From NCBI GenBank assembly GCA_024137785.1, contig JAHRHZ010000266.1, positions 198,738 through 262,737 on the forward strand: a stretch of DNA of 64,000 nt. The letters are read 5' to 3'. Positions within the stretch are counted from its first letter, which is position 1; every line of letters begins with the position of its first letter. A program made the position numbers and the translations under genes. Under the pieces are notes generated by a model. That model was given only the letters and a program-made list of their open reading frames with translations. It was not told where the DNA came from and made no database searches. Positions 248 to 47,848 of the stretch are shown here, piece after piece. This DNA is from Ginglymostoma cirratum (Eukaryota).

Positions 248-1335
248 AATACAGGCCCTTCAGCCCACGATGTTGTGCAAATCTATTACTCTACGAAGAC
301 CAATCGACCCTGTATACCCTACATTTTAGTATCCTCTATGTCCCTATCCAAGAGTTGCTTAAAAGTCTCTAAAGTATCTGACTCCGCTACCACTGCCAGC
401 AGTGCATTCCACACGCCCACCACTCTCTGTGTAAAGAACCTACCTCTAATATCTCCCTATACCTTCCTCCAATCAACTTCAAATTATACCTCCTTGTAAT
501 AGTCATCTCCGCCCTGGGAAAAAGTCTCTGACTATCCACTCTATCTTCGCCTCTCATCATCTTGTACAACTCTATCAAGTCATCTCTCATCCTTTTTCGC
601 TACAATGAAAAGAGTCCTAACTCCCTCAACCTTTCCTCATCAGACCTGCCCTCCACTCCAGGCAGCATCCTGGTAAATCTCCTCTTCACACTCTCTAAAG
701 CTTTCACATCTTTCCTATAATGAGGTGACCAGAACTGAATGCAACATTCCAAGTGTGGTCTAATCAGAGTTTTATAGAGCTGCAGCATAACCTCACGGCT
801 CTTAAACTCAATTCCCCTGCCAATGAAAGCCAACACACCATACACCTTCTTTACAACCCTATCAACTTGGGTAGCAACTTTGAGGAATCTGTGGACATGC
901 ACCGCAAGATCCCTCTGTTCCTCCACACTGCCGAGAATCCCGCCATTAACTCTGTATTCTGCATTCAAATTCCACCTTCCAAAATGAATCAATTCACACT
1001 TTCCTGGATTGAATTCCATCTGCCGCTTCTTTGCCCAGCTCTTCATCCTGTCAATGTCCCGTTGCAAACTACAACAGCCCTCCACACTGTCCACAACTCC
1101 ACCAACCTTTGTCTCATCGGCAAACTTACTAACCCACCCTTCCACTTCCTCATCCAAGTTATTTATAAAGATCACAAAGAGCAGAGGTCCCAGAACAGAT
1201 CCTTGCAGAGCACCACTGGTCACCGAGCTCCAGGCTGAATCTTTTCCATCTACCGCCATGCTCTGTGTTCTACTGGACAACCAATTCTGTATCCAGACAG
1301 CCAGATCTTCCTCAATCCCATGCCTCCTTACTTTC
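248..1335 (-). mobile_element. CR1 LINE 3' fragment (RT C-terminus and tail)
   Basis: ORF 600-1280 has QGSVLGPLLF, SKFADETK, RPHLECCIQFWSP; same subfamily as 24675-25978 and 38670-39865. Confidence 0.93.
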
Positions 1336-3570: not shown

Positions 3571-3678
3571 TAAAATTGTATCAGAGATAAAAGGTACTGC
3601 AGATGCTGGAGAATCCAAGATAACAAGCATGGGGCTGGATGAACACAGCAGGTCAAGCAGCATCATAGGAGCAGGAAA

Positions 3679-3716
3679 ACTTGACGTTTCGGGCCCAGAC
3701 CCTTCATCAGAAATGG
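3679..3716 (-). ncRNA. Minimal hammerhead ribozyme motif in Penelope pLTR
   Basis: CUGAUGA-A-GGGU(CUGG)GCCC-GAAAC-GUC-AAG; also at 10636-10663; degenerate at 47403-47430. Confidence 0.7.
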
Positions 3717-3965
3717 GGGAGGGGAAGAGGGTTCTGAAATAAATAGGGAGAGAGGGGGAGGCGGATAGAGGATGGATAGAGGAGAGCATAGGTGGAGAGG
3801 AGACAGACAAGTCGAAGAGGCGGGGATGGAGCCAGTAAAGGTGAGTGTAGGTAGGGGGGTGGGGAGGAGATAGGTCAGTCCAGGGAGGATGGACAGGTCA
3901 AGGGGGCGGGATGATGTTAGTAGATAGGAGATGGGGGTGTGGCTTGAGGTGAGAGGAAAAACAGG

Positions 3966-5192
3966 TTAGGGAGGTGGAAATGAGCTGGGCTGGTTTTGGG
4001 ATGCGGTTGGGGTAGGGGAGATTTTGAAGCTTGTGAAATCCACATTGATACCATTGGGCTGCAGGGTTCCCAGGCTGAATATGATTTGCTGTTCCTGCAC
4101 CCTTCCGGTGGCATCACTGTGGCATTGCAGGAGGCCCAGGATGGACATGTCATCTGAGGAATGGGAGTGGGAGTTGAAATGGTTCGCGACTGGGAGGTGC
4201 AGTTGTTTGTTGCGAACTGAGCGCAGGTGTTCTGCAAAGCGGTCCCCAAGCCTCCGCTTGGTTTCCCCGATGTAGAGGAAGCCACAACGGATACAGCGGA
4301 TGCAGTATACCACATTGGCAGATGTGCAGGTGAACATCTGCCTGATGTGGAAAGTCTTCTTGGGGCCTGGAATTGGGGTGAGGGAGGAGGTGTGGGGGCA
4401 GGTGTAGCACTTCCTGAGGTTACAAGGAAAAGTGCCGGGTGTGGTGGGGCTGGAGGGGAGTGTGGAGCGGACAAGGGAGTCACGGAGGGAGTGGTCCCTC
4501 CGGAAGGCAGATAAGGGTGGGGAGGGAAAAATGTCTTTGGTGGTGGGGTCTGATTGCAGATGGCGGAAGTGTCGGAGGATGATGCGTTGGATCCGGAGGT
4601 TGGTGGGGTGGTATGTGAGGACGAGGGGGATTCTTTTTTGGTTATTATTGCGGGGACGGGGCGTGAGGGATGTGTTCCGGGAAATGCGGGAGACACGGTC
4701 GAGGGCGTTCTCGACCACTGTAGGGGGGAAGTTGCGGTCCTTGAAGAATGAGGACATTTGAGATGTACGGGAGTGGAATGTCTCATCCTGGGAGCAGATG
4801 CGGCGGAGGCGAAGGAGTTGGGAATAGGGGATGGCATTTTTGCAGGAGGGTGGGTGGGAGGAGGTGTATTCCAGGTAGCTGTGGGAGTCAGTGGGCTTGA
4901 AATGGACATTGGTTTCTAGGTGGTTGCCCGAGATGGAGACAGAGAGGTCCAGGAAGGAGAGAGAAGTGTTGGAGATGGTCCAGGTGAACTTCAGGTTGGG
5001 GTGGAAGGTGTTGGTGAAGTGGATGAACTGTTCGAGCTCCTCGTGGGAGCACGAGGCGGCGCCAATGCAGTCATCAATGTAACGGAGGAAGAGGTGGGGT
5101 TTAGGGCCAGTGTAGGTACGGAAGAGGGATTGTTCCACGTAACCTACAAAGAGGCAGGCATGGCTTGGGCCCATGCGGGTACCCATGGCCAC
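3966..5192 (-). CDS. Penelope-like RT (C-terminal half) plus GIY-YIG endonuclease, 408 aa open frame
   Basis: AMGTRMGP, RYIDD, FLDL, HP...K.AIPYSQ, Cys-rich linker, NVVYCIRC..CGFLYIGET, NHFN, L.P.GIN motifs. Confidence 0.92.
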   Translation of the reverse strand: MAMGTRMGPSHACLFVGYVEQSLFRTYTGPKPHLFLRYIDDCIGAASCSHEELEQFIHFTNTFHPNLKFTWTISNTSLSFLDLSVSISGNHLETNVHFKPTDSHSYLEYTSSHPPSCKNAIPYSQLLRLRRICSQDETFHSRTSQMSSFFKDRNFPPTVVENALDRVSRISRNTSLTPRPRNNNQKRIPLVLTYHPTNLRIQRIILRHFRHLQSDPTTKDIFPSPPLSAFRRDHSLRDSLVRSTLPSSPTTPGTFPCNLRKCYTCPHTSSLTPIPGPKKTFHIRQMFTCTSANVVYCIRCIRCGFLYIGETKRRLGDRFAEHLRSVRNKQLHLPVANHFNSHSHSSDDMSILGLLQCHSDATGRVQEQQIIFSLGTLQPNGINVDFTSFKISPTPTASQNQPSSFPPP

Positions 5193-9917: not shown

Positions 9918-10016
9918 AAGCTTTTCAGAAGAAGGGTCCAGACCCGAAACGCCAGCTTTCCTGCTCCTCTGATGCAGCTTGGCCTGCTGTGTTCATCCAG
10001 CTCTACACCTTGTTAT
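9918..10016 (+). mobile_element. Mini Penelope pLTR insertion
   Basis: gaagggtccagacccgaaacgccagc...ttgttatc between ctaatatttaa repeats at 9907-9917 and 10017-10027. Confidence 0.8.
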
Positions 10017-10535
10017 CTAATATTTAAGAGGTTGTGTTTTATTTGTGCCACAACATTAGGGGTGCACTTCTTGTGGATATTCAGAGGTATGTCAGCTACA
10101 GAAAGGTAGCAAGGCCTTTTAACATAGCTGGTGTCTTATAACTCATTTACCATTTGCAAATAGATGAGCAGCCACAATGAAATTTCAAGATGCAATCTGA
10201 AACACAATATGTTTACCTGTTCCCCTGAATCTTCTGTCTGTTTGTCTTTTTATTAAAATTCTCATGAGAGATACAGCAGAACTTTGCTTTCTTAATTGTG
10301 CAGCTACAGATGGTATCAGACTAATTGAGGTGCATCAGAATGAAACAGTTATTCCATTGTGCATTATTTACTGTTTTCTACAGGTGAATATATTCTTCAA
10401 TTGCTGAACTCTGCCAGGAAGTCTCTTTTTCACTCTTGTACCACAACATTGGCTTTTATTCACCACAATTGTTCAGCATTTTGGAAAAATAAAATTTTTT
10501 TTAAAAGTCATTACCCAATGTGGGACCTAAGGTAA

Positions 10536-11197
10536 AGAGATAAAAGGTACTGCAGATGCTGGAGAATCTGAGATAACAAGCATGGGGCTGGATGAACACA
10601 GCAGGTCAAGCAGCATCATAGGAGCAGGAAAACTTGACGTTTCGGGCCTAAACCCTTCATCAGAAATGGGGGAGGGGAAGAGGGTTCTGAAATAAATAGG
10701 GAGAGAGGGGGAGGNNNNNNNNNNNNNNNNNNNNNNNNNNNNNNNNNNNNNNNNNNNNNNNNNNNNNNNNNNNNNNNNNNNNNNNNNNNNNNNNNNNNNN
10801 NNNNNNNNNNNNNNNNNNNNNNNNNNNNNNNNNNNNNNNNNNNNNNNNNNNNNNNNNNNNNNNNNNNNNNNNNNNNNNNNNNNNNNNNNNNNNNNNNNNN
10901 NNNNNNNNNNNNNNNNNNNNNNNNNNNNNNNNNNNNNNNNNNNNNNNNNNNNNNNNNNNNNNNNNNNNNNNNNNNNNNNNNNNNNNNNNNNNNNNNNNNN
11001 NNNNNNNNNNNNNNNNNNNNNNNNNNNNNNNNNNNNNNNNNNNNNNNNNNNNNNNNNNNNNNNNNNNNNNNNNNNNNNNNNNNNNNNNNNNNNNNNNNNN
11101 NNNNNNNNNNNNNNTGATGCTGCTTGACCTGCTGTGTTCATCCAGCCCCATGCTTGTTATCTCAGATTCTCCAGCAGCTGCAGTACCTTTTATCTCT
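10536..11197. mobile_element. Inverted pair of Penelope pLTR ends flanking a 400-N gap (10715-11114)
   Basis: Left part near-identical to 3583-3760; right part is its reverse complement. Confidence 0.8.
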
Positions 11198-11619
11198 TAT
11201 CCATGCTTTATCTCACTTCTATATTTGTGCTTTCTCCCCAAATCACTTGGTATCTTTAAAACACCAAAAAATATATTTCTTTCTTAATTATGTTCAGTGA
11301 CTTGGCCTACACATTCTCCTGCGGTAGAGAATTCCACAGATTCACTATCTTTCGAGTGAAGAAATGCTTCTTCAGCTCAGTCCTAATTGGTCTACGCCAT
11401 ATCCTGAGACTGTGTCCCCTTGTTTAAAATTATTTTGGCGGGGATCGGAGAATCAGGAATTCGAGAGAAACAAGGTACATAGAATATTTGAGAGACCAGA
11501 TTGCACAAGACTATGAAGTAAATGGGATCAGAGAAAGAGTGTAAATAATAAATTCAAAGACAAGGTTACTGTCTCTGTAATTGAGGGCATGGAGAGTGGT
11601 AAACCAGATTGGCGAGTAA

Positions 11620-14460: not shown

Positions 14461-16099
14461 CTGTCTGTGCAGGGTGGGTGGATGTGAAGAGTTCAGGTGC
14501 ATGGAAAATTGTGTTTTACCAATCTCGGAATATCCAAAATTGGCAGTTAAAAACTGATTGCAGTACTGATCTGTATGTGCTAGTAGAGGAACCTGTAAAC
14601 TGAGATCCATATGGATTAACCTGGGTTCAAACACCAGTGGGCTCTCAGGAGCACAATTGAAGAATCACTCACTAGTCACCCCTGCATTGCAGGTGAGAGG
14701 AATGTATTATTCTGAGTGCAGGAAGCAGCTAGCAAGCAAGCCTGTCAAAAGGGAAAAAAAAAACACCTTTCTCTTTGAGTGTTGTTAGCTAACTACTGTC
14801 AAAGGGAAACAGAAGATAAAAGATTTCAACCATGTGTAAAAGACTAGATGTCCAAAATCAATGAATATACTTTCAATATTTCACCATCTACTTTTCATTA
14901 AGACCCACACAGACTTGAATCATTTATTTTACTTTCGGAATCACTTCTAATTCCTAAACTATTTTTAACTATGTTGTGTTATTAATTCTTTGTTGTGTTT
15001 AATACTTAGAAAATTCACTCTTTTTTCAATCAAGAAAGCTTTGTTTAACTGACCTCTTTGAAAGTATAAAATAATTTGATCTGGAGGGAGAAGGTATCCA
15101 AAAGAGAGGGATTTTTTTCTATTAACCTTATTGCAACCGATTGAGGGGGTAGTGACTAACAAATGAACACCAGTTCATTCCTCCACACCCGCAACAGTAA
15201 GGATTTGGGGTATCTGTCCAGAACTGGAATAACTAGGGGTAAAAGACTTGAGGCTCAGATCACGAATCCACAGATTAATTCAAAGAATTAGAGTGGGTAA
15301 ATTGCCATGTTAAAAATGCTTTCTTGAGTTTGCATTACCACGGTATAGATTTGTATGCATTCAATGCCAGAACATTCCTTGCTGAATTAGGAAATGTTAC
15401 GCATGAGGAATCAAATGTTGCACCTCAAACAGTTAAAAGATGTAGAGAGGTATTTGGGATTCAAAATTTGCCAGAAAGCCAGGAAACTCAAAACTTTAAA
15501 AGGGGTGGCCAACGCTTTACAGGAATTCAGGATGATAAAATAGTTAGAGGAATTAAAACTGGAGCAGTGGAAACTAGAATTTCAAGAAAAAGGAAAAGAA
15601 TTTTGGAAATGGGAGAGAGGAAAGGGAAAAGGAGGAAAGGGCAAAGAGAAAAGAGAGTGAATTTGAGGCACAACGGAGATTGAACAAACCAGCTTGAGCT
15701 GCTGTGTGCCATGAAGATGGGTTTGAATGGGAGACTCTTTAGAATGTTGTTCTGGGCTTGAAGGGCTGAATGGCCTGCTTTCACACTGTAGGGATTCTAT
15801 AATGAAGTAATCATCTCTCTCAAATGGTCGAATTCACTATCCCTGAATGTGGTGGATGCTCGGACATTGAGTAAGTTTAAGGACGAGATAGCCACATGTT
15901 TAATTAGTATGTGCTGGAGGGTTATGGAGCGCTGGCAGCAAAGTGGAATTGAGGCTGATATGAGATTAGTCATGATTGTATCAAATGGTGAAGCAGGCTT
16001 AATGGGCTGAATTCTCTACTCCTTCTCCAGGTCCTTACGTTCTTTGCATTCGGTGACAAAGGTGTTTATTTCTAAAAACAGCCTGAGAGACAAAGATAG

Positions 16100-16294
16100 C
16101 AAGGTGTGGAGCTGGATGAATACAGAAGGCCAAGCAGCATCATAGGAGCAGGAAAGCTTGCGATAGGGTTAGGGTTAGGGCTAACCCTAACCCTATCGCA
16201 TTCCTGCTCCTATGATGCTGCTTGGCCTGTTGTGTTCATCCAGCTCCACATCTTCTTACCTCAAATTCTCCAGCATCTGCAGTTCCTACTATCT
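16100..16294. mobile_element. Penelope pLTR fold-back insertion with a telomeric-repeat hairpin core
   Basis: Inverted pLTR arms; core 16159-16200 tgcgatagggttagggttag-gg-ctaaccctaaccctatcgca; 17-bp TSD with 2 mismatches at 16083-16099 and 16295-16311. Confidence 0.85.
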
Positions 16295-17756
16295 CTGAGA
16301 GAAATAGATAGTTTTGGAGTCTAATGGAAATTTGTTTGCATCGGGAGAATTTTACATGTGAATAAAGTAAACAGTTGTGTGCTGGATTTCAGTTTAGAAG
16401 GTCAGAGACTGATTTTTCTCTTTTGACCAGGTGAAACATCCATAGATTGGAAGAATATTTAAGATTTCAGTTTGGCAATTTTGCAGAACGATTTAATGAA
16501 GCTGGATGTATAAACACTCACTCCTGAGAAAGGAAGGAAATTAAAACTGTTAAGAAATAGGCTACCTTAGATCAAGGAGTTTAGTTTAAAGATTCCAGAC
16601 CAGATGTATTTGGTTGAAACCCGAAACGGGTTACAAAAAAGCCTAGAAAGTCTAAGTTGGGTTGTATAAAGGATCAAGGAAGAGGCAATCAGATTCACAT
16701 AACTAGGAATTAAAAATACAGCGAAGTCAAACACAATGTGTGACAGAAAAGAGAATTCTCTGCAGTGTTTGAGTACTGAATGGGGTGATTTTGAGATTAA
16801 TTGGGTTGTTTTTTATCATGGGATTTGGAATCTTCAAAAATGTTCTATATGTAGACAGTTTCATTTATTCTATTTTGTATTCATTTTACGTGATAAACAC
16901 CTTGTTTTATTTTATGAAACCAAATCTGTGCTTATGTTTCAATGAGAAGCCACCTCAATGCAGCCAAGAAAAAACAAAATATGATCTGCCAAGGCATATT
17001 TTAGTCTGGGATCTGATTTGTAACTTAAAAGCATCAGCTGAGATATAACACTTGGTAGCAGACCAACAAGGTGACACATTTTTAACAACACTAGCTCACA
17101 CTGAAGCTGAGGCAGAAACAGTCCCTGAATATCACTACATTATAAATGAGGTGTTGATGAGAAAAGGAGACCAGCTGCCCCTAACGGACCTTCAAACAAG
17201 GACTGGACAGTAATCCAACAGGCGGTCATGCTTACAAGGTGGACTATGGGAAATATTTCAGCTCGTATACGAGAGTCTGATGGCTGGGCATATCGGTATA
17301 TGCAAAGCCCTAGCCCACATTAACCAGCATTTGTACTGGCCACAGCTCCACAAGGATGTCGTGAGGTTTTTGCACCCGTGTGGGATCCGTGGAATGTTGC
17401 ACCTGTAGAGTGTCAGGGAAACTTCAAACAAGAAGAGAAACATAGCAAGACGACTTAATGAAGAAGGCGACTATTTTCCTTCTCTTAGCAGAAAGCCACC
17501 TCTTGAGTATTGCAGTACCAAGAACACACATAAAAGTAGGTCAATAATCAATTGTAACTTTGATCAGTTTGTAATAGTGAAGGAAGATCTGGGGCTCATG
17601 TGTACTAGCCTGGATTCAGGCTACTGTCATGTAAAGATCACAATCAAAGGACCATCCACTAATCACTCCTGCATTTCAGGTGAAAGGGATCTATCACACT
17701 CTGTGCTGAAATTCATCTAACCGAAAAGTGGGTCCAAAGGAATAAGAAGAAAAGTT

Positions 17757-18364: not shown

Positions 18365-18805
18365 ATGGTGGCCAAGTGGTATTATTGCTAGAATATTAAT
18401 CTAGAAACTCGCGTTGAAATCTTGTCACAGTAGAATTCGAATTCAATTTAAAAAATCTGGAATTAAAAAAACCTACTGATGAGCATGAAATCTTTGATAA
18501 CAAGGTGTGGGGCTGGATGAACACAGCAGGCCAAGCAGCATCATAGGAGCAGGAAAACTTGACGTTTCGGGCCGAGACCCGAAATCTTTGCTGGGTATCA
18601 GAAAAACCCACCTGGCTCATTAATATCCTTCAGGGAAGGAAATCTGCCATTCTTACCTGGTCTGGCCAACATGTGACTCTGGATTCACAGCAATGTGGAT
18701 GACTTTGAACTGCTCTTTGAAATAGCTCAGTTGAAGGGCAACTGGGTCCAGGCAATAAATGCTGACTGATCAGTGATGACAATGTCCCATGAGTAAATAA
18801 AAACA
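18365..18805 (+). mobile_element. tRNA-derived SINE interrupted by a single-arm Penelope pLTR (18497-18580)
   Basis: SINE body as at 52448-52787; insert flanked by gaaatctttg repeats at 18487-18496 and 18581-18590. Confidence 0.8.
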
Positions 18806-24559: not shown

Positions 24560-26790
24560 TTTTATTTCAAAAATATACTTTATTCATAGAACTATCTTTA
24601 TGTATATAGAGATACATATATGTATATGTATATAGACATAGAGATAGAGATGTAGAGATATGTATATAGAGATAGGATTTATAATCATCTAGAAAGGAAT
24701 AATTTGATTAGGGATAGTCAACACGGTTTTGTGAAGGGTAGGTCGTGCCTCACAAACCTTATTGAATACTTTGAGAAAGTGGCTAAACTGTTGGATGAGG
24801 GTAAAGCAATTGATGTGGTGTATATGGATTCAGTAAAGCATTTGAAAAGGTTCCCCACGGTAGGCTATTGCAAAAAATACAGAGGCGTGGGATTGAGGGT
24901 GATTTAGTGGTTTGGATCAGAAATTGGCTAGCTGGAAAAAGACAGAGGGTGGTGGTTGGTGGGAAATGTTCATCCTGGAGTTCAGTTACTAGTGGTGTAC
25001 CGCAAGGATCTGTTTTGGGGCCACTGCTGTTTGTCATCTTTATAAATGACCAGGATGAGGGCATAGAAGGATGGGTTAGTAAATTTGCGGATGGCACTAA
25101 AGTCAGTGGAGTTGTGGATAGTGTGGAAGGATGTTGCAGGTTACAGAGGGACATAGATAAGCTGCAGAGCTGGGCTGAGAGGTGGCAAATGGAGTTTAAT
25201 GCAGAAAAGTGTGAGGTGATTCACTTTGGAAGGAGTAACAGGAATACAGAGTACAGAGTGAATGGTAAGATTCTTGGTAGTGTGGATGAGCAGAGAGATC
25301 TTGGTGTCTGTGTGCACAGATCCCTGAAAGTTGCCACTCAGGTTGATAGGGTTGTTAGGAAGGCGTACGGTGTGTTAGGTTTTATTGATAGAGGGATTGA
25401 GTTTCGGAGCCGTGAGGTCATGTTGCAGCTGTACAAAACTCTGGTGCAGCCTCACTTGGAGTATTGCGTACAGTTCTGGTCGCCGCAATATAGGAAGGAT
25501 GTGGAAGCATTGGAAAGGGTGCAGAGGAGATTTACCAGGATGTTGCCTGGTATGGAGGGTAGGTCTTACGAGGAAAGGCTGAGGGACTTGAGGCTGTTTT
25601 CGTTAGAGAGAAGAAGGTTAAGAGGTGACTTAATAGAGACATACAAGATGATCAGAGGATTAGATAGCGTGGACATTGAGAGCCTTTTTCCTCGGATGGT
25701 GATGGCTAGCACAAGGGAACATAGCTTTAAATTGAGGGGTGATAGATATAGGACAGATGTCAGAGGTAGGTTCTTTATTCAGAGAGTAGTAAAGGCGTGG
25801 AATGCCTTGCCTGCAATAGTAGTAGACTTGCCAACTTTAAGGGCACTTAAATGGTCATTGGATAAACATATGGATGATAAGGGAATAGTGTAGGTTAGAT
25901 GGGCTTCAGATTGGTTTCACAGGTCGGCGCAACATCGAGGGCCGAAGGGCCTGTACTGTGCTGTAATGTTCTATGTTCTATATATACAGAGACACAAATG
26001 CAGTTTGGTTTTGTATAGTAGCATATGGAGAAACAAACATTGGAGTTGACTCTGTCCTGCAAACATATCAAAGGCATTTCTTACTCGTACAAGGTTATAT
26101 CTGCATATATTTGAAGCATTGGAAGGGTCCAATAACTGAAGGGACCCCCATTTAACTTCAGCAGAAAGACCTTACATAGTGGTCTTTCCCCACTGTGCTT
26201 TGTTGGCAGATGCCCCAAGCTTTAGTCAGTCCCTCAGCATGTAGTCCTGAACCTTAGAATGTGCCAGTCTGCAACAATCCAAAAGACCAACACGTTTCAG
26301 GCAAACCAAAGAGTGTCTTTCACTGACTTGATGGTCCTCCAGGTGTTTGTCTCGGTGTGCGTCCCAGGGAACAGACCGTAGAGCACAAACTTTTGCATCG
26401 TCGAACTGCTTGGGATGAACTTCAACAACAGCCACTGCGTCTCTCTCCAGACTTCCTTTGCAAAAGCACACTCCAGCAGGAGGTGTGTGACAGCCTCTAC
26501 CTCCCCGCAGTCACTTCAAGGTGGTGCAGAGAGTCTGGGCATACATGAAGGATCTCATAGGTAATACCCTTCTCACCACCAGCCAAACAATTCCTTGGTG
26601 CTTGTAGGAAAGTTCTGGTGATGAGGCATCCTGCCTCATGACTTTGACAGTCTGCTCAGGGAAAAACCCAACAGGATCCACCCTATCCTTTTCCCACAAG
26701 ATCTCAAGATTGCTAACATGCTGGTCACTTAGTGATGGACTTGTGGTAAAAGTTTCTCTTTGCAAATTTCTCCATGCAGTTCAACAACTT
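24560..26790 (-). mobile_element. Tx1/L1-clade LINE 3' fragment, split by a CR1 insertion
   Basis: ASSPELS.KHQ.I.WLVVRR.LP.RSF, zinc-knuckle region, CCRLAHSKVQDY.LRD; AATAAA and A-rich 3' end at about 24560-24590. Confidence 0.75.
24675..25978 (+). mobile_element. Young CR1 LINE, 5'-truncated (ORF 24868-25893, 341 aa RT C-terminus)
   Basis: SQHGF.KGRSCLTNL, GVPQGSVLGP, KFADG; tail gttctatgttcta. Confidence 0.95.
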
Positions 26791-27515: not shown

Positions 27516-27544
27516 CTTAGGTGCCAATCAAGTGGAATGCTTTG

Positions 27545-27747
27545 ATAACGAGGTGTAGAGCTGGATGAACACAGCAGGTCAAGCAGCATCAGAGGAGCAG
27601 GAAGGCTGACGTTTCGGGCCTAGACCCTTCCTCCCGAAATGTCAGCCTTCCTGCTCCTCTGATGCTGCTTGACCTGCTGTGTTCATCCAGCTCTACACCT
27701 TGTTATCTCAGATTCTCCAGCATCTGCAGTTCTTACTATCTCTGAAA
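27545..27747. mobile_element. Penelope pLTR fold-back (hairpin) insertion
   Basis: About 73-bp near-perfect inverted arms plus a 3' tail; perfect 16-bp TSD caagtggaatgctttg at 27529-27544 and 27748-27763. Confidence 0.9.
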
Positions 27748-28424
27748 CAAGTGGAATGCTTTGTCCTCTTTGGTTTTGAACATTTTGAGCATCATTGAAT
27801 ATTACATTACACTTATGACTTGTTCCTTGTAGATGATGGGCAACCTTTGAGTCAGTTAAGTGACTCGCTCCAGACTTCCCAGCCTCTGCACTGCATTTGT
27901 CCCAATAGTTTTTATGCTGAATAGTCTATTTCTGGCTAATGCTAAATGCACTGATAGCAATACCATTTAACATCAAGGGAGATGGTTTGATTCTCCCTTC
28001 TTAAAGGTCGTTATTGACTGGTAGTGAATGTTGTCCAGGTGGCACTGCGTCTGTACGTAAACCCCTTCAGTCTCTGAGGATTCATGAATGGCACTAAACA
28101 CTGTGCAATCATCAGCAAACATTACCACTCTGGCTTTATCCTGGAGGGAATGTCATTGATGAAGCTGCTGAAAATGGTTGGGCCAAGGTCACTACCGTGA
28201 GGAACTCCTGTGGACATGAGTGATTGAACTTCGACAATCAGAACCATCTTTCTTTGTGCTGGGTCTCAGTCAAATTAGTGGAGTATTTTCCTTGATTCCA
28301 ATTAACTCTGTTTGTTTTTCTAGACCTCCGTGATGCTGCATCAGCTTCTGCTTTCATTCTCAGAAATTTCATCAGACTCTGTAACTCTTGAGGCAACAGT
28401 TTCTATTTCACTGTGAGCATCAAA

Positions 28425-30435
28425 AGAACATAAGAACACAAGAACTAGGAGCAGGAGTAGGCCATCTGGCCCCTCGAGCCTGCCCCGCCACTGAATAAGA
28501 TCATGGCTGATCTTTTTGTGACTCAGCTCCACTTACTCGCCCACTCACATAACCCTTAATTCCTTTACTGTTCAAAAATTTATCAAGCCTTGCCTTAAAA
28601 ACATTCAGCGAGGTAGCTTCAACCGCTTCACTGGGCAGGAAGTTCCACAGATTCACAACCTTTTGGGTGAAGAAGTTCCTCCTGACCTCAGTCCTATATC
28701 TGCTTCCCTTTATTTTGAGGCAATGCCCTCTAGTCCTAGTTTCACTTGCTAGCGGAAACAACCTCCCTGCCTCCACCTTATCTATTCCCTTCATAATCTT
28801 ATATGTTTCTATAAGATCTCCCCTCACTCTTCTGAATTCCAATGAGTATAATCCCAGCCTACTCAGTCTCTCTTCATAATCCAACCCTCTCAACGGTGGA
28901 ATCAACCCAGTGAATCTCCTCTGCACCCCCTCCAGTGCTAGTATATCTCTTCTCAAGTAAGGAGACCAAAACTGCACACAGTACTCCAGCAGTGGCCTCA
29001 CCAGGACTCTATACAGCTGCAGCACAGCCTCCCTGTTTTTAAACTCCATCCCTCTAGCAATGGCAGACAAAATTCCATTTGCCTTTTTAATTACCTGCTG
29101 CACCTGCAATCCCACCTTCAGTGATTCATGCACAAGGACACCCAAGTCCCTCTGCACAGCAGCGTGCTGCAATTTTTTACCATTTAAAACATAATCCATT
29201 TTACTGTTATTCCTACCAAAATGGATGACCTCACACTTATCAACATTGTACTCCATCTGCCAGACCTTTGCCCACTCACTTAGACTATCTATATCCCTCT
29301 GCAGACTTTCAGTATCTTCTGCACACTTTGCTCTACCACTCACCTTAGCGTCATCTGCAAATTTTGACACACCACACTTAGTCCCCAACTCCAAATCATC
29401 TATGTAAATTGTAAACAATTGCAGTCCCAACACTGATCCCTGAGGCACACCGCTTGCCATTGACCGCCAACCAGAAAAACATCCATTTACCACTACTCTT
29501 TGCTTTCTACTGGTCAACCAATCCTCTATCCATGGCAATATATTACCTGTAATACCGTGCAACTTTATCTTATGTAGCAGCCTTTGGTGTGGCACCTTGT
29601 CAAATGCCTTCTGGAAATTCAGATACACCACATCCACAGGTTGCCCATTGTCCACCATGCAAGTAGTGTCCTCAAAGAATTCCACCAAATTAGTTAAACA
29701 TGACCTACCTCTCATGAACCCATGCTGGGTGTTTCTAATGGGACAATTTATATCCAGATGTCTTGCTATTTCTTCCTTAATGATAGATTCAAGCATTTTC
29801 CCCACTACCGAAGTTAAGCTAACTGGCCTGTCGTTACCTGCTTTTTGTCTACTTCCTTTTTTAAACAGTGGCATCACATTGGCTGTTTTCCAATCTGCGG
29901 GAACCACCCCAGAGTCCAGTGAATTTTGGTAAATAATTACTACTGCATTTGCTATTTCCCCCATCACCTCGTTTAGTACCCTGGGATGCATTTCATCAGG
30001 GCCAGGAGACTTGTCCACCTTCCGCCCCATTAGTTTGCCCAGCACTGCCTCCTTAGTGGTAATGATAGTTTCTAGGTCCTCGCCTGCTATAACCTTCTTG
30101 CCATTAGTTTTCGGCATGTTATTTGTGTCTTCCACTGTGAAGACCAACACGAAATAACTGTTTAATGTCTCGGCTATTTCCTCATTCTCAGTTATTAAAT
30201 TGGCCTTCTCATCCTCTAAAGGACCAATGTTTACCTTCGCCACTCTTTTACAATTTACATATTTATAGAAACTTTTGCTGCCTGTTTTTATATTCTGAGC
30301 TAGTTTACTCTCATAATCTATTTTACTAATCTAATTACTATCTTACTAATCTATCTCATAACTTTTTTGTGGCTTTCTGCTGGCTTTTAAAGATTTCCCA
30401 GTCTACTAGTTTCCCACTACCCTTTGCTCTTTTGT
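28425..30435 (-). mobile_element. CR1 LINE, 5'-truncated, with 580-aa open ORF2 fragment (28501-30243) covering the whole RT domain
   Basis: KSPGPD..HPRVL, WK.ANV.PLFKKG, QHGF..GRSC.TNL, FQKAFDKVPH, GVPQGSVLG, KFADD. Confidence 0.95.
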
Positions 30436-36035: not shown

Positions 36036-36722
36036 GGGTTTGCTCTGGTCCGTTGCAATGTTTACGATACCACTGTCTCCCGCTCAATGACACACACAAA
36101 CAGAGTTAAGGCTGATAGGGCCACTGCATCCTCAATTGTTGTCTGGTGTTATATTTGCAGCATGAATGGCCAATCCAGCAGCTTGATGAGTGCCAGTGAT
36201 GGACAATTTACAGTCCTGGCCCCCACTAATAGGTTCATTCATCATTTTGTATAGCTGCTGCTGACATTCCAAGGGGTTTCTCACTCTGGTCAGGAAGTAT
36301 TGCTGACAAGTGCTTAGCATGAGTCATTTACCCTCTAGTCCAAGCCTTAGATCACCAAAGCGCAACAGGATAGGGCTAAACCATTCAGCCCATTGAGTCG
36401 TTTAACAAAAAAGTATTCTTTGATTGGTGGGTGCTGCAAGCCATGCCCTGAAAGGGTAGATGTGGGTGAGATATTTTCCCTGCCCAGGGATATGGAGATA
36501 GAGGGACAAGCAAGGTTTTTTTTCAAAATTTATTCCTGAGAATTTAATGTCACTGGCAGGGCCAGCATGTACTGCCTATCCCTAATTGTCCTTGAGCAGG
36601 TAGTGAGTAGCTACCTTCTTAAATCACTGGCTTGTAGGTAGACCCACTGTTGAAGAGGATTTTGATGCAGCAAGATTGAAAGGAATGGTAAATATATTTC
36701 CAAACCGGGATGTTGAGTAGCT

Positions 36723-36848
36723 GATAAAGGGTCTAGGCCCAAAACGTCAAGCTCTCTTGCTCCTACGATGCTGCTTGGCCTGCTGTGTTCATCCAGCTCT
36801 ACACCTTGTTATCTCGGATTCTCCAGCACCTGCAGTTCCTATTATCTC
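36723..36848 (+). mobile_element. Mini Penelope pLTR insertion starting at the hammerhead core
   Basis: TSD tgttgagtagct at 36711-36722 and 36849-36860. Confidence 0.85.
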
Positions 36849-37550
36849 TGTTGAGTAGCTTGGTTGGACTGCAGGGGTGGCAGCGCCCAGAGCAAAGATT
36901 TCTGGCTTCGGTAAGCCCAGAGCATGGACTGAGCGGGTTATGGGCTGCAGCACCGATGGGGACGCTTAGACGCAGCAGGTTGCTGCAGCAGAGGCAGTGC
37001 TCAGAGCAGGAACTCCTGTCTGTGGTATGCCTGAAGCATCGATTCTTGGCAGGTTTGTCATTGCTGGTCCCAGAGAGCGGTGACTCCCTCGCAGAAGCCT
37101 GAGAGTTGTGTTTGAAGACCCATCGTACAGAAGGTGAACTCTATTTGTTTATTTGCATTTTGTTCTTCTTGGAACTGAAAATAACACTGGATAGTGGCAA
37201 CAAAACACTTTCCACTGTATCTTTCCATTTACTCATAACAATAAATCAATAAATAACTTGCAAATGGTAGTGTTCCCATCCATTTGGTATTGGTCACAAA
37301 TTTGGAAAGGGATATCAAAGGAGAGTTACTGAGTTGTTGCTTCATCATTCAGCAGAATTTTCAGAACTTCTCAATGACATGAAATGTTAATTCCCTTCCT
37401 CCATTTACAAATTCTACCTTATATCTTAATTATTTCCAGAATTTTGCTTTTGGGTACTCTAAACTGCAGAGAGAGGGTCGTATATGCTCGAGCTTTTGCT
37501 GAAGGTGGCCAAACAGGTTGGGAATGTTCCAACAGTGGTCATTCACTTAC

Positions 37551-46803: not shown

Positions 46804-47345
46804 CTGTAACACAAACAGGAATGATAAGGGGACATTCATCAGCAGGTTTGTCCTTAGATATCAGCAATGGCTCAGTAGACACCACCTCTGAGTTAGAAGA
46901 TTGTGGATTAAATCCCATCTCCAGAGGCTACAACATAAAATCTAGGCTGACACTTCAGAATTGTGTTGCTGGGATGAAATCTGTATGATTTAGACATATA
47001 TAGATTATTCTAATTGTTAGATTTTGGAGTTAAAAATAGTGACATTTGAATGGATTTTGTTTTGGTGGGTTTAAAAAAACCTGTTCAGATACTGTTTGTG
47101 GAGCAGTGTCAGAGTGCAGAAAACTCTGGGGTGTCAATGGAAAATCATTTATCCCCAGGTGGTTTAGAACAGGAGAATTAAATATTGATGGTCACTACGT
47201 TGTTTTCAGTTTAAAATAGTCAAAGATTAATGTTTTGGTTGCAAACCTCAAAGATTGAATATTATTAAGGCAGTCTAAAAGAGATCTGACTTGGAACAGA
47301 CCAAGTATAGTATTTTTCTTTCAGAGCAGCTAAGGAAATAGATTA

Positions 47346-47448
47346 GGTGTGGAGCTGGATGAACACAGCAGGCCAAGCAGCATCATAGGAGCAGGAAAGC
47401 TTGACGTTTTGGGCCTAGACCCTTCATCAGAAAATTTTCTGATGAAGG
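47346..47448. mobile_element. Penelope pLTR fold-back running into a 400-N gap (47449-47848)
   Basis: Perfect palindrome centre ccttcatcagaaaa|ttttctgatgaagg immediately before the gap. Confidence 0.8.
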
Positions 47449-47848
47449 NNNNNNNNNNNNNNNNNNNNNNNNNNNNNNNNNNNNNNNNNNNNNNNNNNNN
47501 NNNNNNNNNNNNNNNNNNNNNNNNNNNNNNNNNNNNNNNNNNNNNNNNNNNNNNNNNNNNNNNNNNNNNNNNNNNNNNNNNNNNNNNNNNNNNNNNNNNN
47601 NNNNNNNNNNNNNNNNNNNNNNNNNNNNNNNNNNNNNNNNNNNNNNNNNNNNNNNNNNNNNNNNNNNNNNNNNNNNNNNNNNNNNNNNNNNNNNNNNNNN
47701 NNNNNNNNNNNNNNNNNNNNNNNNNNNNNNNNNNNNNNNNNNNNNNNNNNNNNNNNNNNNNNNNNNNNNNNNNNNNNNNNNNNNNNNNNNNNNNNNNNNN
47801 NNNNNNNNNNNNNNNNNNNNNNNNNNNNNNNNNNNNNNNNNNNNNNNN

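What the first reader, a model, noticed from the sequence alone, without database searches (positions are those of the whole stretch)
16083..16311. Telomeric TTAGGG/CCCTAA hairpin replacing the ribozyme in a Penelope fold-back
Seen: 16159-16200 is a perfect 20-bp inverted repeat with a 2-nt spacer, tgcgatagggttagggttag-gg-ctaaccctaaccctatcgca, between inverted pLTR arms and inside a 17-bp TSD. The left arm ends at ggaaagctt(g), within 1 nt of the predicted hammerhead cleavage site (GAAACGUC^AAGCUUUCC on the other strand). The G-rich repeats follow the 3' end of the would-be cDNA. Established: Penelope RTs are the closest relatives of telomerase RT, and endonuclease-less Penelopes join telomeric repeats. 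Inference: cDNA from a ribozyme-cleaved RNA was extended by telomerase, or by a template switch to telomeric or telomerase RNA, then snapped back before integration. That would be a route to interstitial telomeric sequences by an endonuclease-bearing vertebrate Penelope.
Basis: partly seen in the sequence, partly recalled or inferred. Interest (0 to 1): 0.8.

Follow-up and report, generated by a model that had tools for sequence, protein, structure and literature searches.

The report
Telomere-repeat palindrome in Penelope fold-back
A short, inverted double insertion of a shark Penelope-type retrotransposon end carries at its exact centre a 42-base perfect palindrome of head-to-head telomere repeats; it is real and seen in three independent samples, but it is a single case that resembles known telomere-repeat patches left by break repair, so telomerase involvement is plausible but unproven.

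Summary
16159-16200 is a perfect 20+2+20 palindrome holding the window's only in-register TTAGGG runs. It sits between inverted arms of a very abundant hammerhead-bearing Penelope-like (GIY-YIG) 3' end-piece, inside a 15/17 target duplication. Contigs from four runs (three samples, three studies) cover its centre.

The left arm does start at the predicted ribozyme cut, and G-strand repeats do follow both would-be cDNA 3' ends. However, the arms are not one snapped-back cDNA. The left arm ends at the family's short 3' terminus and the right arm at the 37-nt "tail" terminus. That fits two convergent target-primed cDNAs, as a purified Penelope protein makes in vitro.

Removing the core leaves a perfect 24-nt palindrome, so the patch interrupts a clean AAGCTT junction 2 nt off centre. 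An identical 5-nt linker, TGCGA, on both sides is not what direct telomerase priming predicts. It does not match the one shark telomerase RNA I could read.

The closest precedent is the rare head-to-head short telomeric insert at break-repair sites. The scan had met Penelope fold-backs in this genome before, but never a telomeric centre. Interest is modest.

The parts
16083..16099 (.). Left copy of the target-site duplication (CTGAGAGACAAAGATAG). Its last 5 nt (GATAG) overlap the terminus of the left arm.
   Evidence: 15/17 identity with 16295-16311; sequence read.
16095..16158 (-). Left arm: the Penelope-like 3' end-piece, sense on the minus strand. It runs from the predicted hammerhead cut (AAGCT at 16154-16158; the T at 16159 is shared with the core) to the family's short 3' terminus (here GCTATC). 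It has no tail. I read it as cDNA primed from the top-strand nick.
   Evidence: Alignment A1. The same short terminus is seen in copies at 18490-18585, 9920-10026 and the left arm at 27540-27645. Three private differences from the majority of copies.
16159..16200 (.). Core: TGCGATAGGGTTAGGGTTAGGGCTAACCCTAACCCTATCGCA, a perfect 20-nt inverted repeat around a GG spacer. On each side it consists of a 5-nt non-telomeric linker (TGCGA / TCGCA) plus telomeric repeats arranged head to head.
   Evidence: Covered by contigs in 4 runs from 3 samples. Rfam gives only weak hairpin-shaped hits far below the gathering scores.
16164..16180 (+). G-strand telomeric run of 17 nt in perfect register (TAGGGTTAGGGTTAGGG).
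16181..16195 (-). G-strand telomeric run of 15 nt on the minus strand, mirror of the above and 2 nt shorter.
16201..16297 (+). Right arm: the same end-piece, sense on the plus strand. It starts at TTCCTGC (5 nt after the predicted cut) and runs to the long terminus, including the 37-nt tail (...TATCTCTG). I read it as cDNA primed from the bottom-strand nick.
   Evidence: Alignment A1; blastn against natural copies. Five to six private differences from the majority of copies.
16295..16311 (.). Right copy of the target-site duplication (CTGAGAGAAATAGATAG). Its first 3 nt overlap the end of the element.
27529..27763 (.). Comparator: a second fold-back of the same family with a perfect 16-bp duplication (CAAGTGGAATGCTTTG at 27529 and 27748). 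The left arm ends at the short terminus and the right arm has the tail. The centre lies inside hammerhead helix II and has no telomeric filler.
3582..5192 (-). Comparator: a longer copy of the family. Its pLTR has an intact minimal hammerhead motif (CTGATGA...GAAACGTC), preceded by a 408-aa ORF that ends in a GIY-YIG endonuclease domain.
   Evidence: PF01541, E = 2.5e-5, residues 294-371.

Best explanation
An endonuclease-bearing Penelope-like element made a two-sided target-primed insertion.

Step 1 (well supported). One cDNA was primed on the bottom strand from the tail terminus of the RNA and became the right arm. A second cDNA was primed on the top strand from the internal terminus 37 nt upstream and became the left arm. 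Both ran towards an RNA 5' end at the hammerhead cut (AAGCUU...).

Step 2 (shown as a sequence fact, inferred as history). The 3' ends of such cDNAs end in the self-complementary AAGCTT, which gives a clean fold-back junction.

Step 3 (inferred). That junction was opened 2 nt off its centre, either while the intermediate was being resolved or at a later break of the palindrome. It was resealed with a 42-bp head-to-head telomeric patch. A 3' end received a 5-nt linker and then about 2.5 G-strand repeats copied from a C-rich template. The template was most probably telomerase RNA, because 15-17 nt in register needs more than one template pass. The mirror half arose either by fold-back copying of the new tail or by the same reaction on the opposite 3' end. 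The ends were then ligated.

The result is a short interstitial telomeric sequence of the rare head-to-head type, placed at a retrotransposon junction.
For: - Family identity: there are 11 copies in the window. A GIY-YIG ORF lies beside a pLTR carrying a hammerhead motif.
- Two alternative 3' termini lie 37 nt apart. The left arms of both fold-backs use the short one and the right arms use the long one. This matches the Penelope 'tail' and the finding that a purified Penelope protein, predicted to be a dimer, cleaves and extends both DNA strands from two RT start sites (PMC11167929).
- Target duplications of 15/17, 16/16 and 11/11 bp are present.
- 16145-16158 joined to 16201-16210 is a perfect 24-nt palindrome.
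- G-strand polarity leads away from both 3' ends, in perfect register for 17 and 15 nt.
- The core halves are identical and the arms have no mismatch within 28 nt of the junction, whereas there are 7 mismatches in the outer 33 nt. P is about 0.01 for the arms alone and 0.001 with the core (my calculation).
- Precedent: 3 of 41 telomerase-RNA-flanked telomeric inserts in vertebrates are head to head. In the Xenopus case the mirror symmetry also takes in 4 non-telomeric letters (PMC8537989).
- Contigs from 3 samples cover the centre.
Against: - The TGCGA linker is not expected if telomerase primes directly on ...AAGCT or ...GGAA.
- It does not match the template flank of the S. torazame telomerase RNA, although the species probably differs and 5 nt is too short to test.
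- Only one locus is known.
- In the anole element, hammerhead cleavage was dispensable in vitro and no RNA ends were found at the cut (PMC11167929). A run-off at a cleaved 5' end is therefore an inference from one arm.
- The absence of changes in the 40 paired core letters is not significant on its own (P about 0.1 at 5-6% divergence).
- The steps that join two G-rich tails, or a hairpin tail, to the other end are not shown by anything here.
Confidence: 0.5

Rival explanations
1. No telomerase was involved. The Penelope reverse transcriptase, or a repair polymerase, jumped from the end of the RNA to another C-rich telomeric template (telomeric C-strand DNA, a C-rich telomeric transcript or an interstitial repeat with a TCGCA border). 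It copied about 20 nt and then folded back. The patch is captured filler, formed at integration.
For: - Junctions of this family often carry short fillers and mini snap-backs: 9 nt at about 18580 and at least 14 nt at about 47433. Fillers such as AGCCTCT and AGAGG appear among genome-wide joints (table 5c).
- The non-telomeric TGCGA is naturally explained as part of a copied template.
- End-to-end template jumping is established for related target-primed reverse transcriptases (my own knowledge, not tested here).
Against: - C-rich telomeric templates other than telomerase RNA are scarce.
- A random filler would be telomeric only rarely.
- It does not explain why the patch interrupts an otherwise perfect 24-nt palindrome without loss of a letter.
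Confidence: 0.25
2. 5' transduction. The RNA came from a source copy truncated at the ribozyme cut and lying next to CCCTAA repeats. Both cDNAs copied the same 20-22-nt 5' leader and were joined blunt.
For: It would explain why linker and repeats are identical on both sides without a hairpin step. The two arms belong to the same subfamily.
Against: - It predicts further insertions with the same leader, but word depth in the central bin is 3-4 orders of magnitude below the arms and only a few-fold above the unique flanks. That is about what a single-copy palindrome laid twice gives.
- The right arm lacks the 5 letters AAGCT between leader and arm.
- The leader would have to start at almost the same letter in both cDNAs.
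Confidence: 0.1
3. Assembly or library artefact (adapter, chimeric or palindromic read), or a chance palindrome.
For: Inverted Penelope structures are known to disturb assemblies (PMC8557442). Two 400-N runs in this window sit at other inverted pairs.
Against: - Contigs from four runs of three samples and three studies cover 16181 with no other letters listed.
- The arms differ at 7 positions, and the flanks are different unique DNA bounded by a target duplication.
- A perfect 20-nt inverted repeat is expected about 1e-7 times in 64 kb.
Confidence: 0.03

Closest known systems
Penelope-like element insertions with an adjacent inverted 5'-truncated copy and an optional 30-40-bp tail (Evgen'ev and Arkhipova 2005; Craig et al. 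2021, PMC8557442; Frangieh et al. 2024, PMC11167929)
   Same: GIY-YIG family, minimal hammerhead in the pLTR, target duplication, inverted partner at the 5' side, two 3' termini 37 nt apart, and extreme 5' truncation to about 65-100 nt.
   Different: The centre of the fold-back holds a telomeric palindrome instead of ribozyme sequence or a plain junction. This was not reported in the papers I read, nor in this scan's earlier notes on this genome.
Short interstitial telomeric sequences inserted at double-strand-break repair sites, including telomerase-RNA-flanked ones with head-to-head repeats (Nergadze et al. 2007, PMC2246262; PMC8537989)
   Same: A few exact TTAGGG units inserted cleanly at one point, and a head-to-head arrangement as in 3 of 41 loci. 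In the Xenopus laevis locus the mirror symmetry also includes a few non-telomeric letters next to the repeats. G-strand polarity leads away from the two DNA ends.
   Different: The break here is the meeting point of two retrotransposon cDNAs, or the centre of the palindrome they formed. A telomerase-RNA origin of the 5-nt linker is not shown. No empty orthologous site is available.
Endonuclease-deficient, telomere-attached Penelope-like elements (Athena, Coprina, Terminons; Gladyshev and Arkhipova 2007; PMC6431247)
   Same: [quoted passage not shown]
   Different: Those elements lack the endonuclease and sit at chromosome ends. They carry reverse-complement repeats immediately downstream of the hammerhead at the element's 3' end. 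Here the family has GIY-YIG, the site is internal, and the repeats lie at the 5' side in both orientations.
L1 5' inversions by twin priming
   Same: Both target strands prime cDNA and the two products meet in the middle, joined by host repair with occasional filler.
   Different: In L1 the two parts are consecutive segments of one RNA. Here both arms cover the same segment, as expected if a dimeric Penelope complex copies two RNAs or the same RNA twice.

Membership tests
Penelope-like element, endonuclease-bearing (3' pLTR mini-insertion) | GIY-YIG endonuclease encoded by the element | tested here: met
   ORF 3966-5192(-) has PF01541 at residues 294-371, E = 2.5e-5 and 24.9 bits against a cut-off of 22.6. 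It lies directly upstream of family copy 3582-3900(-).
Penelope-like element, endonuclease-bearing (3' pLTR mini-insertion) | Telomerase-like reverse transcriptase in the same ORF | not tested
   The first 290 residues of the 408-aa ORF gave no Pfam family at E <= 0.01, and the copy is truncated upstream. Other RT ORFs in the window were not assigned to a clade.
Penelope-like element, endonuclease-bearing (3' pLTR mini-insertion) | Minimal hammerhead motif in the pLTR (CUGAUGA, helix II, GAAA, palindromic ACGU in place of helix III, cut after GUC) | tested here: met
   Read directly in the copies at 3649, 10602 and 27575. It matches the min-HHR described in PMC4209133. Rfam covariance models gave nothing, as expected for a motif without helix III. 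Cleavage activity was not tested.
Penelope-like element, endonuclease-bearing (3' pLTR mini-insertion) | Target-site duplication, inverted 5'-truncated partner, and optional 30-40-bp tail | tested here: met
   Duplications of 15/17, 16/16 and 11/11 bp. Inverted arms. Termini 37 nt apart.
Short interstitial telomeric sequence from break repair (head-to-head or telomerase-RNA-flanked type) | Tandem exact TTAGGG units at an internal site, head to head | tested here: met
   17 nt on the plus strand and 15 nt on the minus strand in register, the only such runs in 64 kb.
Short interstitial telomeric sequence from break repair (head-to-head or telomerase-RNA-flanked type) | Flank retrotranscribed from the species' telomerase RNA | tested here: inconclusive
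   The linker is only 5 nt. The S. torazame gene printed in the supplement of PMC8537989 has TAACCCTAAT followed by TTGGTG and preceded by TTTTTTAC, so there is no match. This species' own RNA was not available. Rfam Telomerase-vert scored 5 bits against a gathering score of 70.
Short interstitial telomeric sequence from break repair (head-to-head or telomerase-RNA-flanked type) | One-step insertion shown by an empty orthologous locus | not testable with these tools
Endonuclease-deficient telomere-attached Penelope-like elements | [quoted passage not shown] | tested here: not met
   The family encodes GIY-YIG. The repeats lie where the hammerhead would be, upstream of the post-cut sequence, in both orientations. 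The locus is flanked by unique DNA on both sides.
microRNA or other hairpin RNA gene | Match to a curated family at its gathering score | tested here: not met
   The best hit is mir-8536 at 22.4 bits against a gathering score of 100. The hits reflect hairpin shape only.

The most novel reading that the evidence does not exclude
In the shark germ line, the free cDNA 3' ends of Penelope integration intermediates (run-offs at hammerhead-processed RNA 5' ends) are recurrent substrates for telomerase. An endonuclease-bearing vertebrate Penelope would then seed short head-to-head interstitial telomeric sequences genome-wide. This would be a functional echo of the Penelope-telomerase kinship and of the way endonuclease-less Penelopes are capped at chromosome ends.
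Probability: 0.1. Interest if true: 0.7.

Novelty: new member of a known kind. Interest (0 to 1): 0.35.

Why it matters
If the patch was made by telomerase on retrotransposon cDNA ends, the locus links two known processes. One is Penelope two-strand target-primed insertion. The other is telomerase-mediated sealing of breaks, which creates short interstitial telomeric sequences. The family has on the order of 1e4-1e5 copies in this genome, so a census could test the link directly. As it stands, this is one well-documented example. It also gives sequence-level support in a shark for the two RT start sites, the tail and the both-strand priming so far shown in vitro for an anole Penelope.

Tried and rejected
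- Rfam at gathering thresholds on the whole window found nothing. At lax E-values on a hammerhead-bearing copy it also found nothing useful, because the minimal dimeric hammerhead is not captured by the models. I read the motif by eye instead.
- Rfam on the core gave only hairpin-shaped miRNA-like hits and a 5-bit Telomerase-vert hit. On one half of the core it gave nothing. I rejected an RNA-gene reading.
- A metagenome scan for telomeric repeats within 30 nt of the arm found 0 hits. A scan for the family itself also found 0. That collection therefore holds no such shark DNA, and the first null says nothing.
- The search of earlier findings by sequence returned nothing. The word 'telomeric' returned one unrelated note.
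- Whole-arm snap-back was rejected. The arms use different canonical 3' termini and are offset by 4 nt at the centre.
- I considered a partial origin of TGCGA from the antisense ribozyme (AAGCTTGACG in the family against AAGCTTGCGA here). It needs an indel and is not better than chance, so I dropped it.
- Copy number of the core could not be derived from word depth beyond 'orders of magnitude below the arms and a few-fold above the unique flanks', because depth is one figure per contig.
Full report
**1. The observation**

The sequence is as described. 16159-16200 reads TGCGATAGGGTTAGGGTTAGGGCTAACCCTAACCCTATCGCA. This is two perfectly complementary 20-nt halves around a GG spacer. It lies between inverted arms 16094-16157 and 16198-16261 (64 nt, 88% complementary). 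The whole unit is bounded by CTGAGAGACAAAGATAG at 16083 and CTGAGAGAAATAGATAG at 16295, which match at 15 of 17 positions.

The only in-register telomeric runs of 11 nt or more in the 64-kb window are the 17 nt at 16164-16180 (+) and the 15 nt at 16181-16195 (-). As single-stranded DNA the unit folds at -85.5 kcal/mol, z = -18.

**2. What the arms are**

The arm sequence occurs 11 times in the window, and further fragments were found by blastn. Longer copies continue upstream into CTGATGA, a GGG...CCC hairpin, and GAAACGTC followed by AAGCTT or AAGTTT. This is the minimal hammerhead of Penelope-like elements. A palindromic ACGU replaces helix III, and the motif is thought to act as a dimer (PMC4209133). 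The cut falls after GUC.

The copy at 3582-3900(-) is preceded by a 408-aa ORF ending in a GIY-YIG domain. The family is therefore an endonuclease-bearing Penelope-like element, and the arms are extreme 5' truncations of its 3' end. Read depth shows that the family is enormously abundant, with word depth of 1e5-1e6 on the arms.

Earlier notes of this scan on other pieces of this genome describe the same mini-insertions and fold-backs. None mentions telomeric repeats. These are unchecked AI notes, and I treated them only as leads.

**3. How the fold-back was built**

Alignment A1 shows that the family has two alternative 3' termini.

- The short terminus ends in ...CCTTGTTATC. It is used by the copies at 18490-18585 and 9920-10026 and by the left arms of both fold-backs.
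- The long terminus lies 37 nt further on and ends in ...TATCTCTG. It is used by the right arms of both fold-backs and by the copies at 36715, 3580, 10534, 1 and 11115.

This matches the optional 30-40-bp Penelope 'tail' (PMC8557442). In the anole element the tail is the stretch between two internal RT start sites. That purified protein, predicted to be a dimer, cleaves and extends both DNA strands (PMC11167929).

In both fold-backs of this window (16083-16311, and 27529-27763 with a perfect 16-bp duplication) the left arm uses the short terminus and the right arm uses the tail terminus. Each arm therefore has its own canonical priming end. The fold-back is best read as two convergent target-primed cDNAs, not as one cDNA that snapped back over its whole length.

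Each arm also differs from the majority of copies at private positions only: 3 in the left arm and 5-6 in the right.

**4. The centre**

Read in sense, the left arm begins AAGCTT, preceded by a C that also matches the family. The right arm begins 5 nt further in, at TTCCTGC.

If the 42 nt are taken out, 16145-16158 followed by 16201-16210 is a perfect 24-nt palindrome. Two cDNAs ending in the self-complementary AAGCTT would form exactly this by pairing. The core therefore interrupts a clean junction 2 nt to the 3' side of its centre, with no letter lost or gained.

Four further points follow from the sequence.

- Leading away from each antisense arm the order is the same: a 5-nt linker TGCGA, then G-strand repeats in perfect register. 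This is the polarity of 3'-end extension on a C-rich template.
- 15-17 nt in register is longer than the 10-nt templates marked in the telomerase RNA genes printed in the supplement of PMC8537989. The template was therefore either passed more than once (telomerase) or carried several repeats.
- The linker is identical on both sides. Either one half was copied from the other, or both were copied from the same template.
- The left run is 2 nt longer (…GGG), which accounts for the GG spacer.

**5. Age gradient**

The two arms show 7 mismatches over 61 comparable positions, and all of them lie 28 nt or more from the junction. The core halves show none. The chance that the innermost of 7 mismatches lies that far out is about 0.01 for the arms alone and about 0.001 with the core included (my calculation).

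At 5-6% divergence per arm, zero changes in the 40 paired core letters alone has P of about 0.1. The centre therefore looks younger than, or homogenised relative to, the outer arms. I cannot explain this fully. It leans towards a secondary event at the palindrome centre.

**6. Reads**

Only Logan contigs were available, and each run holds a small share of the stretch. I laid runs X1, X2, X4 and X9, which come from three samples and three studies.

- Position 16181 is covered in all four runs (depths 256, 282, 280 and 43).
- No other letters are listed. One X9 contig lacks one letter at 16181 (depth 11 of 43).
- The central bin has a depth of 54-299, against 1e5-1e6 on the arms and about 5-30 in unique flanks.

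For a single-copy palindrome, several short unitigs overlap the centre and the stem unitig is laid twice. A figure several-fold above the flanks is therefore expected.

I conclude that the core is real and present in independent samples. It is not a feature of the high-copy family and is at most low-copy. No listed piece spans the whole unit, so linkage of core and flanks rests on the assembly.

**7. Mechanism**

Vertebrate short interstitial telomeric sequences are held to be inserted at breaks with telomerase RNA as template. Among 41 such inserts that also carry telomerase-RNA fragments, three have head-to-head repeats. The authors explain these by a second telomerase acting on the other side of the break (PMC8537989). 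In the Xenopus laevis locus printed in their supplement, the mirror symmetry extends 4 letters into the telomerase-RNA flank. That anatomy closely parallels the one seen here.

If this shark's telomerase RNA read CCCTATCGCA at the 3' side of its template, the present core would be the same kind of product made on both 3' ends. The only shark gene I could read is S. torazame, which has TAACCCTAAT then TTGGTG. That does not fit, but the species probably differs, and the flank varies among the vertebrate genes printed in that supplement.

*Hairpin alternative.* One 3' end was extended (linker plus repeats), folded back at GG and was copied for 20 nt before ligation. This explains the identical linker without any requirement on telomerase RNA.

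*Template jump without telomerase.* This is a live rival. Junction fillers and mini snap-backs are common in this family.

*Transduced 5' leader from one source copy.* This is disfavoured by the low depth of the core and by the missing AAGCT on the right side.

**8. Timing**

The clean interruption of a perfect palindrome and the younger-looking centre favour a break in an already formed fold-back. Filler at integration is the commoner kind of event. I regard the two as about equally likely. An orthologous locus would settle it.

**9. Recurrence**

- The metagenome collection holds no copy of the family.

What little can be seen is negative. The second fold-back in the window has no telomeric filler. 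The best-supported genome-wide junction fillers and loose ends at the arm ends are non-telomeric (tables 5c and 7). The scan's other notes on this genome do not mention such a centre.

**10. Comparison and verdict**

The fold-back itself is an ordinary, already described by-product of Penelope integration. The telomeric palindrome belongs to the known class of short interstitial telomeric inserts at repair junctions, of the rare head-to-head type. What is new is its context: the meeting point of two Penelope cDNAs at the ribozyme cut.

It is not a member of the telomere-attached, endonuclease-less Penelopes. It shares with them only the polarity 'cDNA 3' end followed by G-strand repeats' (PMC6431247).

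The locus is a new member of a known kind and of modest interest unless a census shows recurrence.

Noticed in passing
window 10715-11114 and 47449-47848: Both N runs are exactly 400 letters. Each abuts a Penelope end-piece at the centre of an inverted arrangement: 10536-10714(-) faces 11115-11203(+), and 47345-47448(-) ends in a 14-nt mini snap-back right at the N run. This is consistent with inverted Penelope structures being hard to assemble. I left the N runs untouched.
   Followed up: no
window 27529-27763: A second fold-back of the same family with a perfect 16-bp target duplication. Its centre lies in hammerhead helix II, so its RNA templates were not cut at the ribozyme site.
   Followed up: yes
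window 18560-18585 and 47405-47448: Solo copies whose 5' ends carry short inverted snap-backs: about 9 nt within helix II, and at least 14 nt just upstream of the CTGATGA box.
   Followed up: partly
window 16181: One contig of run X9 lacks one letter at the spacer or start of the right half (depth 11 of 43). This may be a length polymorphism of the GGG run or an error.
   Followed up: no
window 36712-36860: A simple 5'-truncated copy starting in the CTGATGA box, with a perfect 11-bp duplication (GTTGAGTAGCT).
   Followed up: partly
The fold-back lies within that gene's span.
   Followed up: no
window 28501-30243 (-), 24868-25893 (+), 600-1280 (-): Three ORFs with RVT_1 reverse transcriptase domains (E = 1e-27, 2e-12 and 8e-10). 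I did not assign them to a clade.
   Followed up: no
window 16201-16261 versus 16095-16154: All 7 arm-to-arm mismatches lie 28 nt or more from the centre. This inner-perfect, outer-diverged gradient is not seen in the 27.6-kb fold-back and is not explained by family-level variability.
   Followed up: partly
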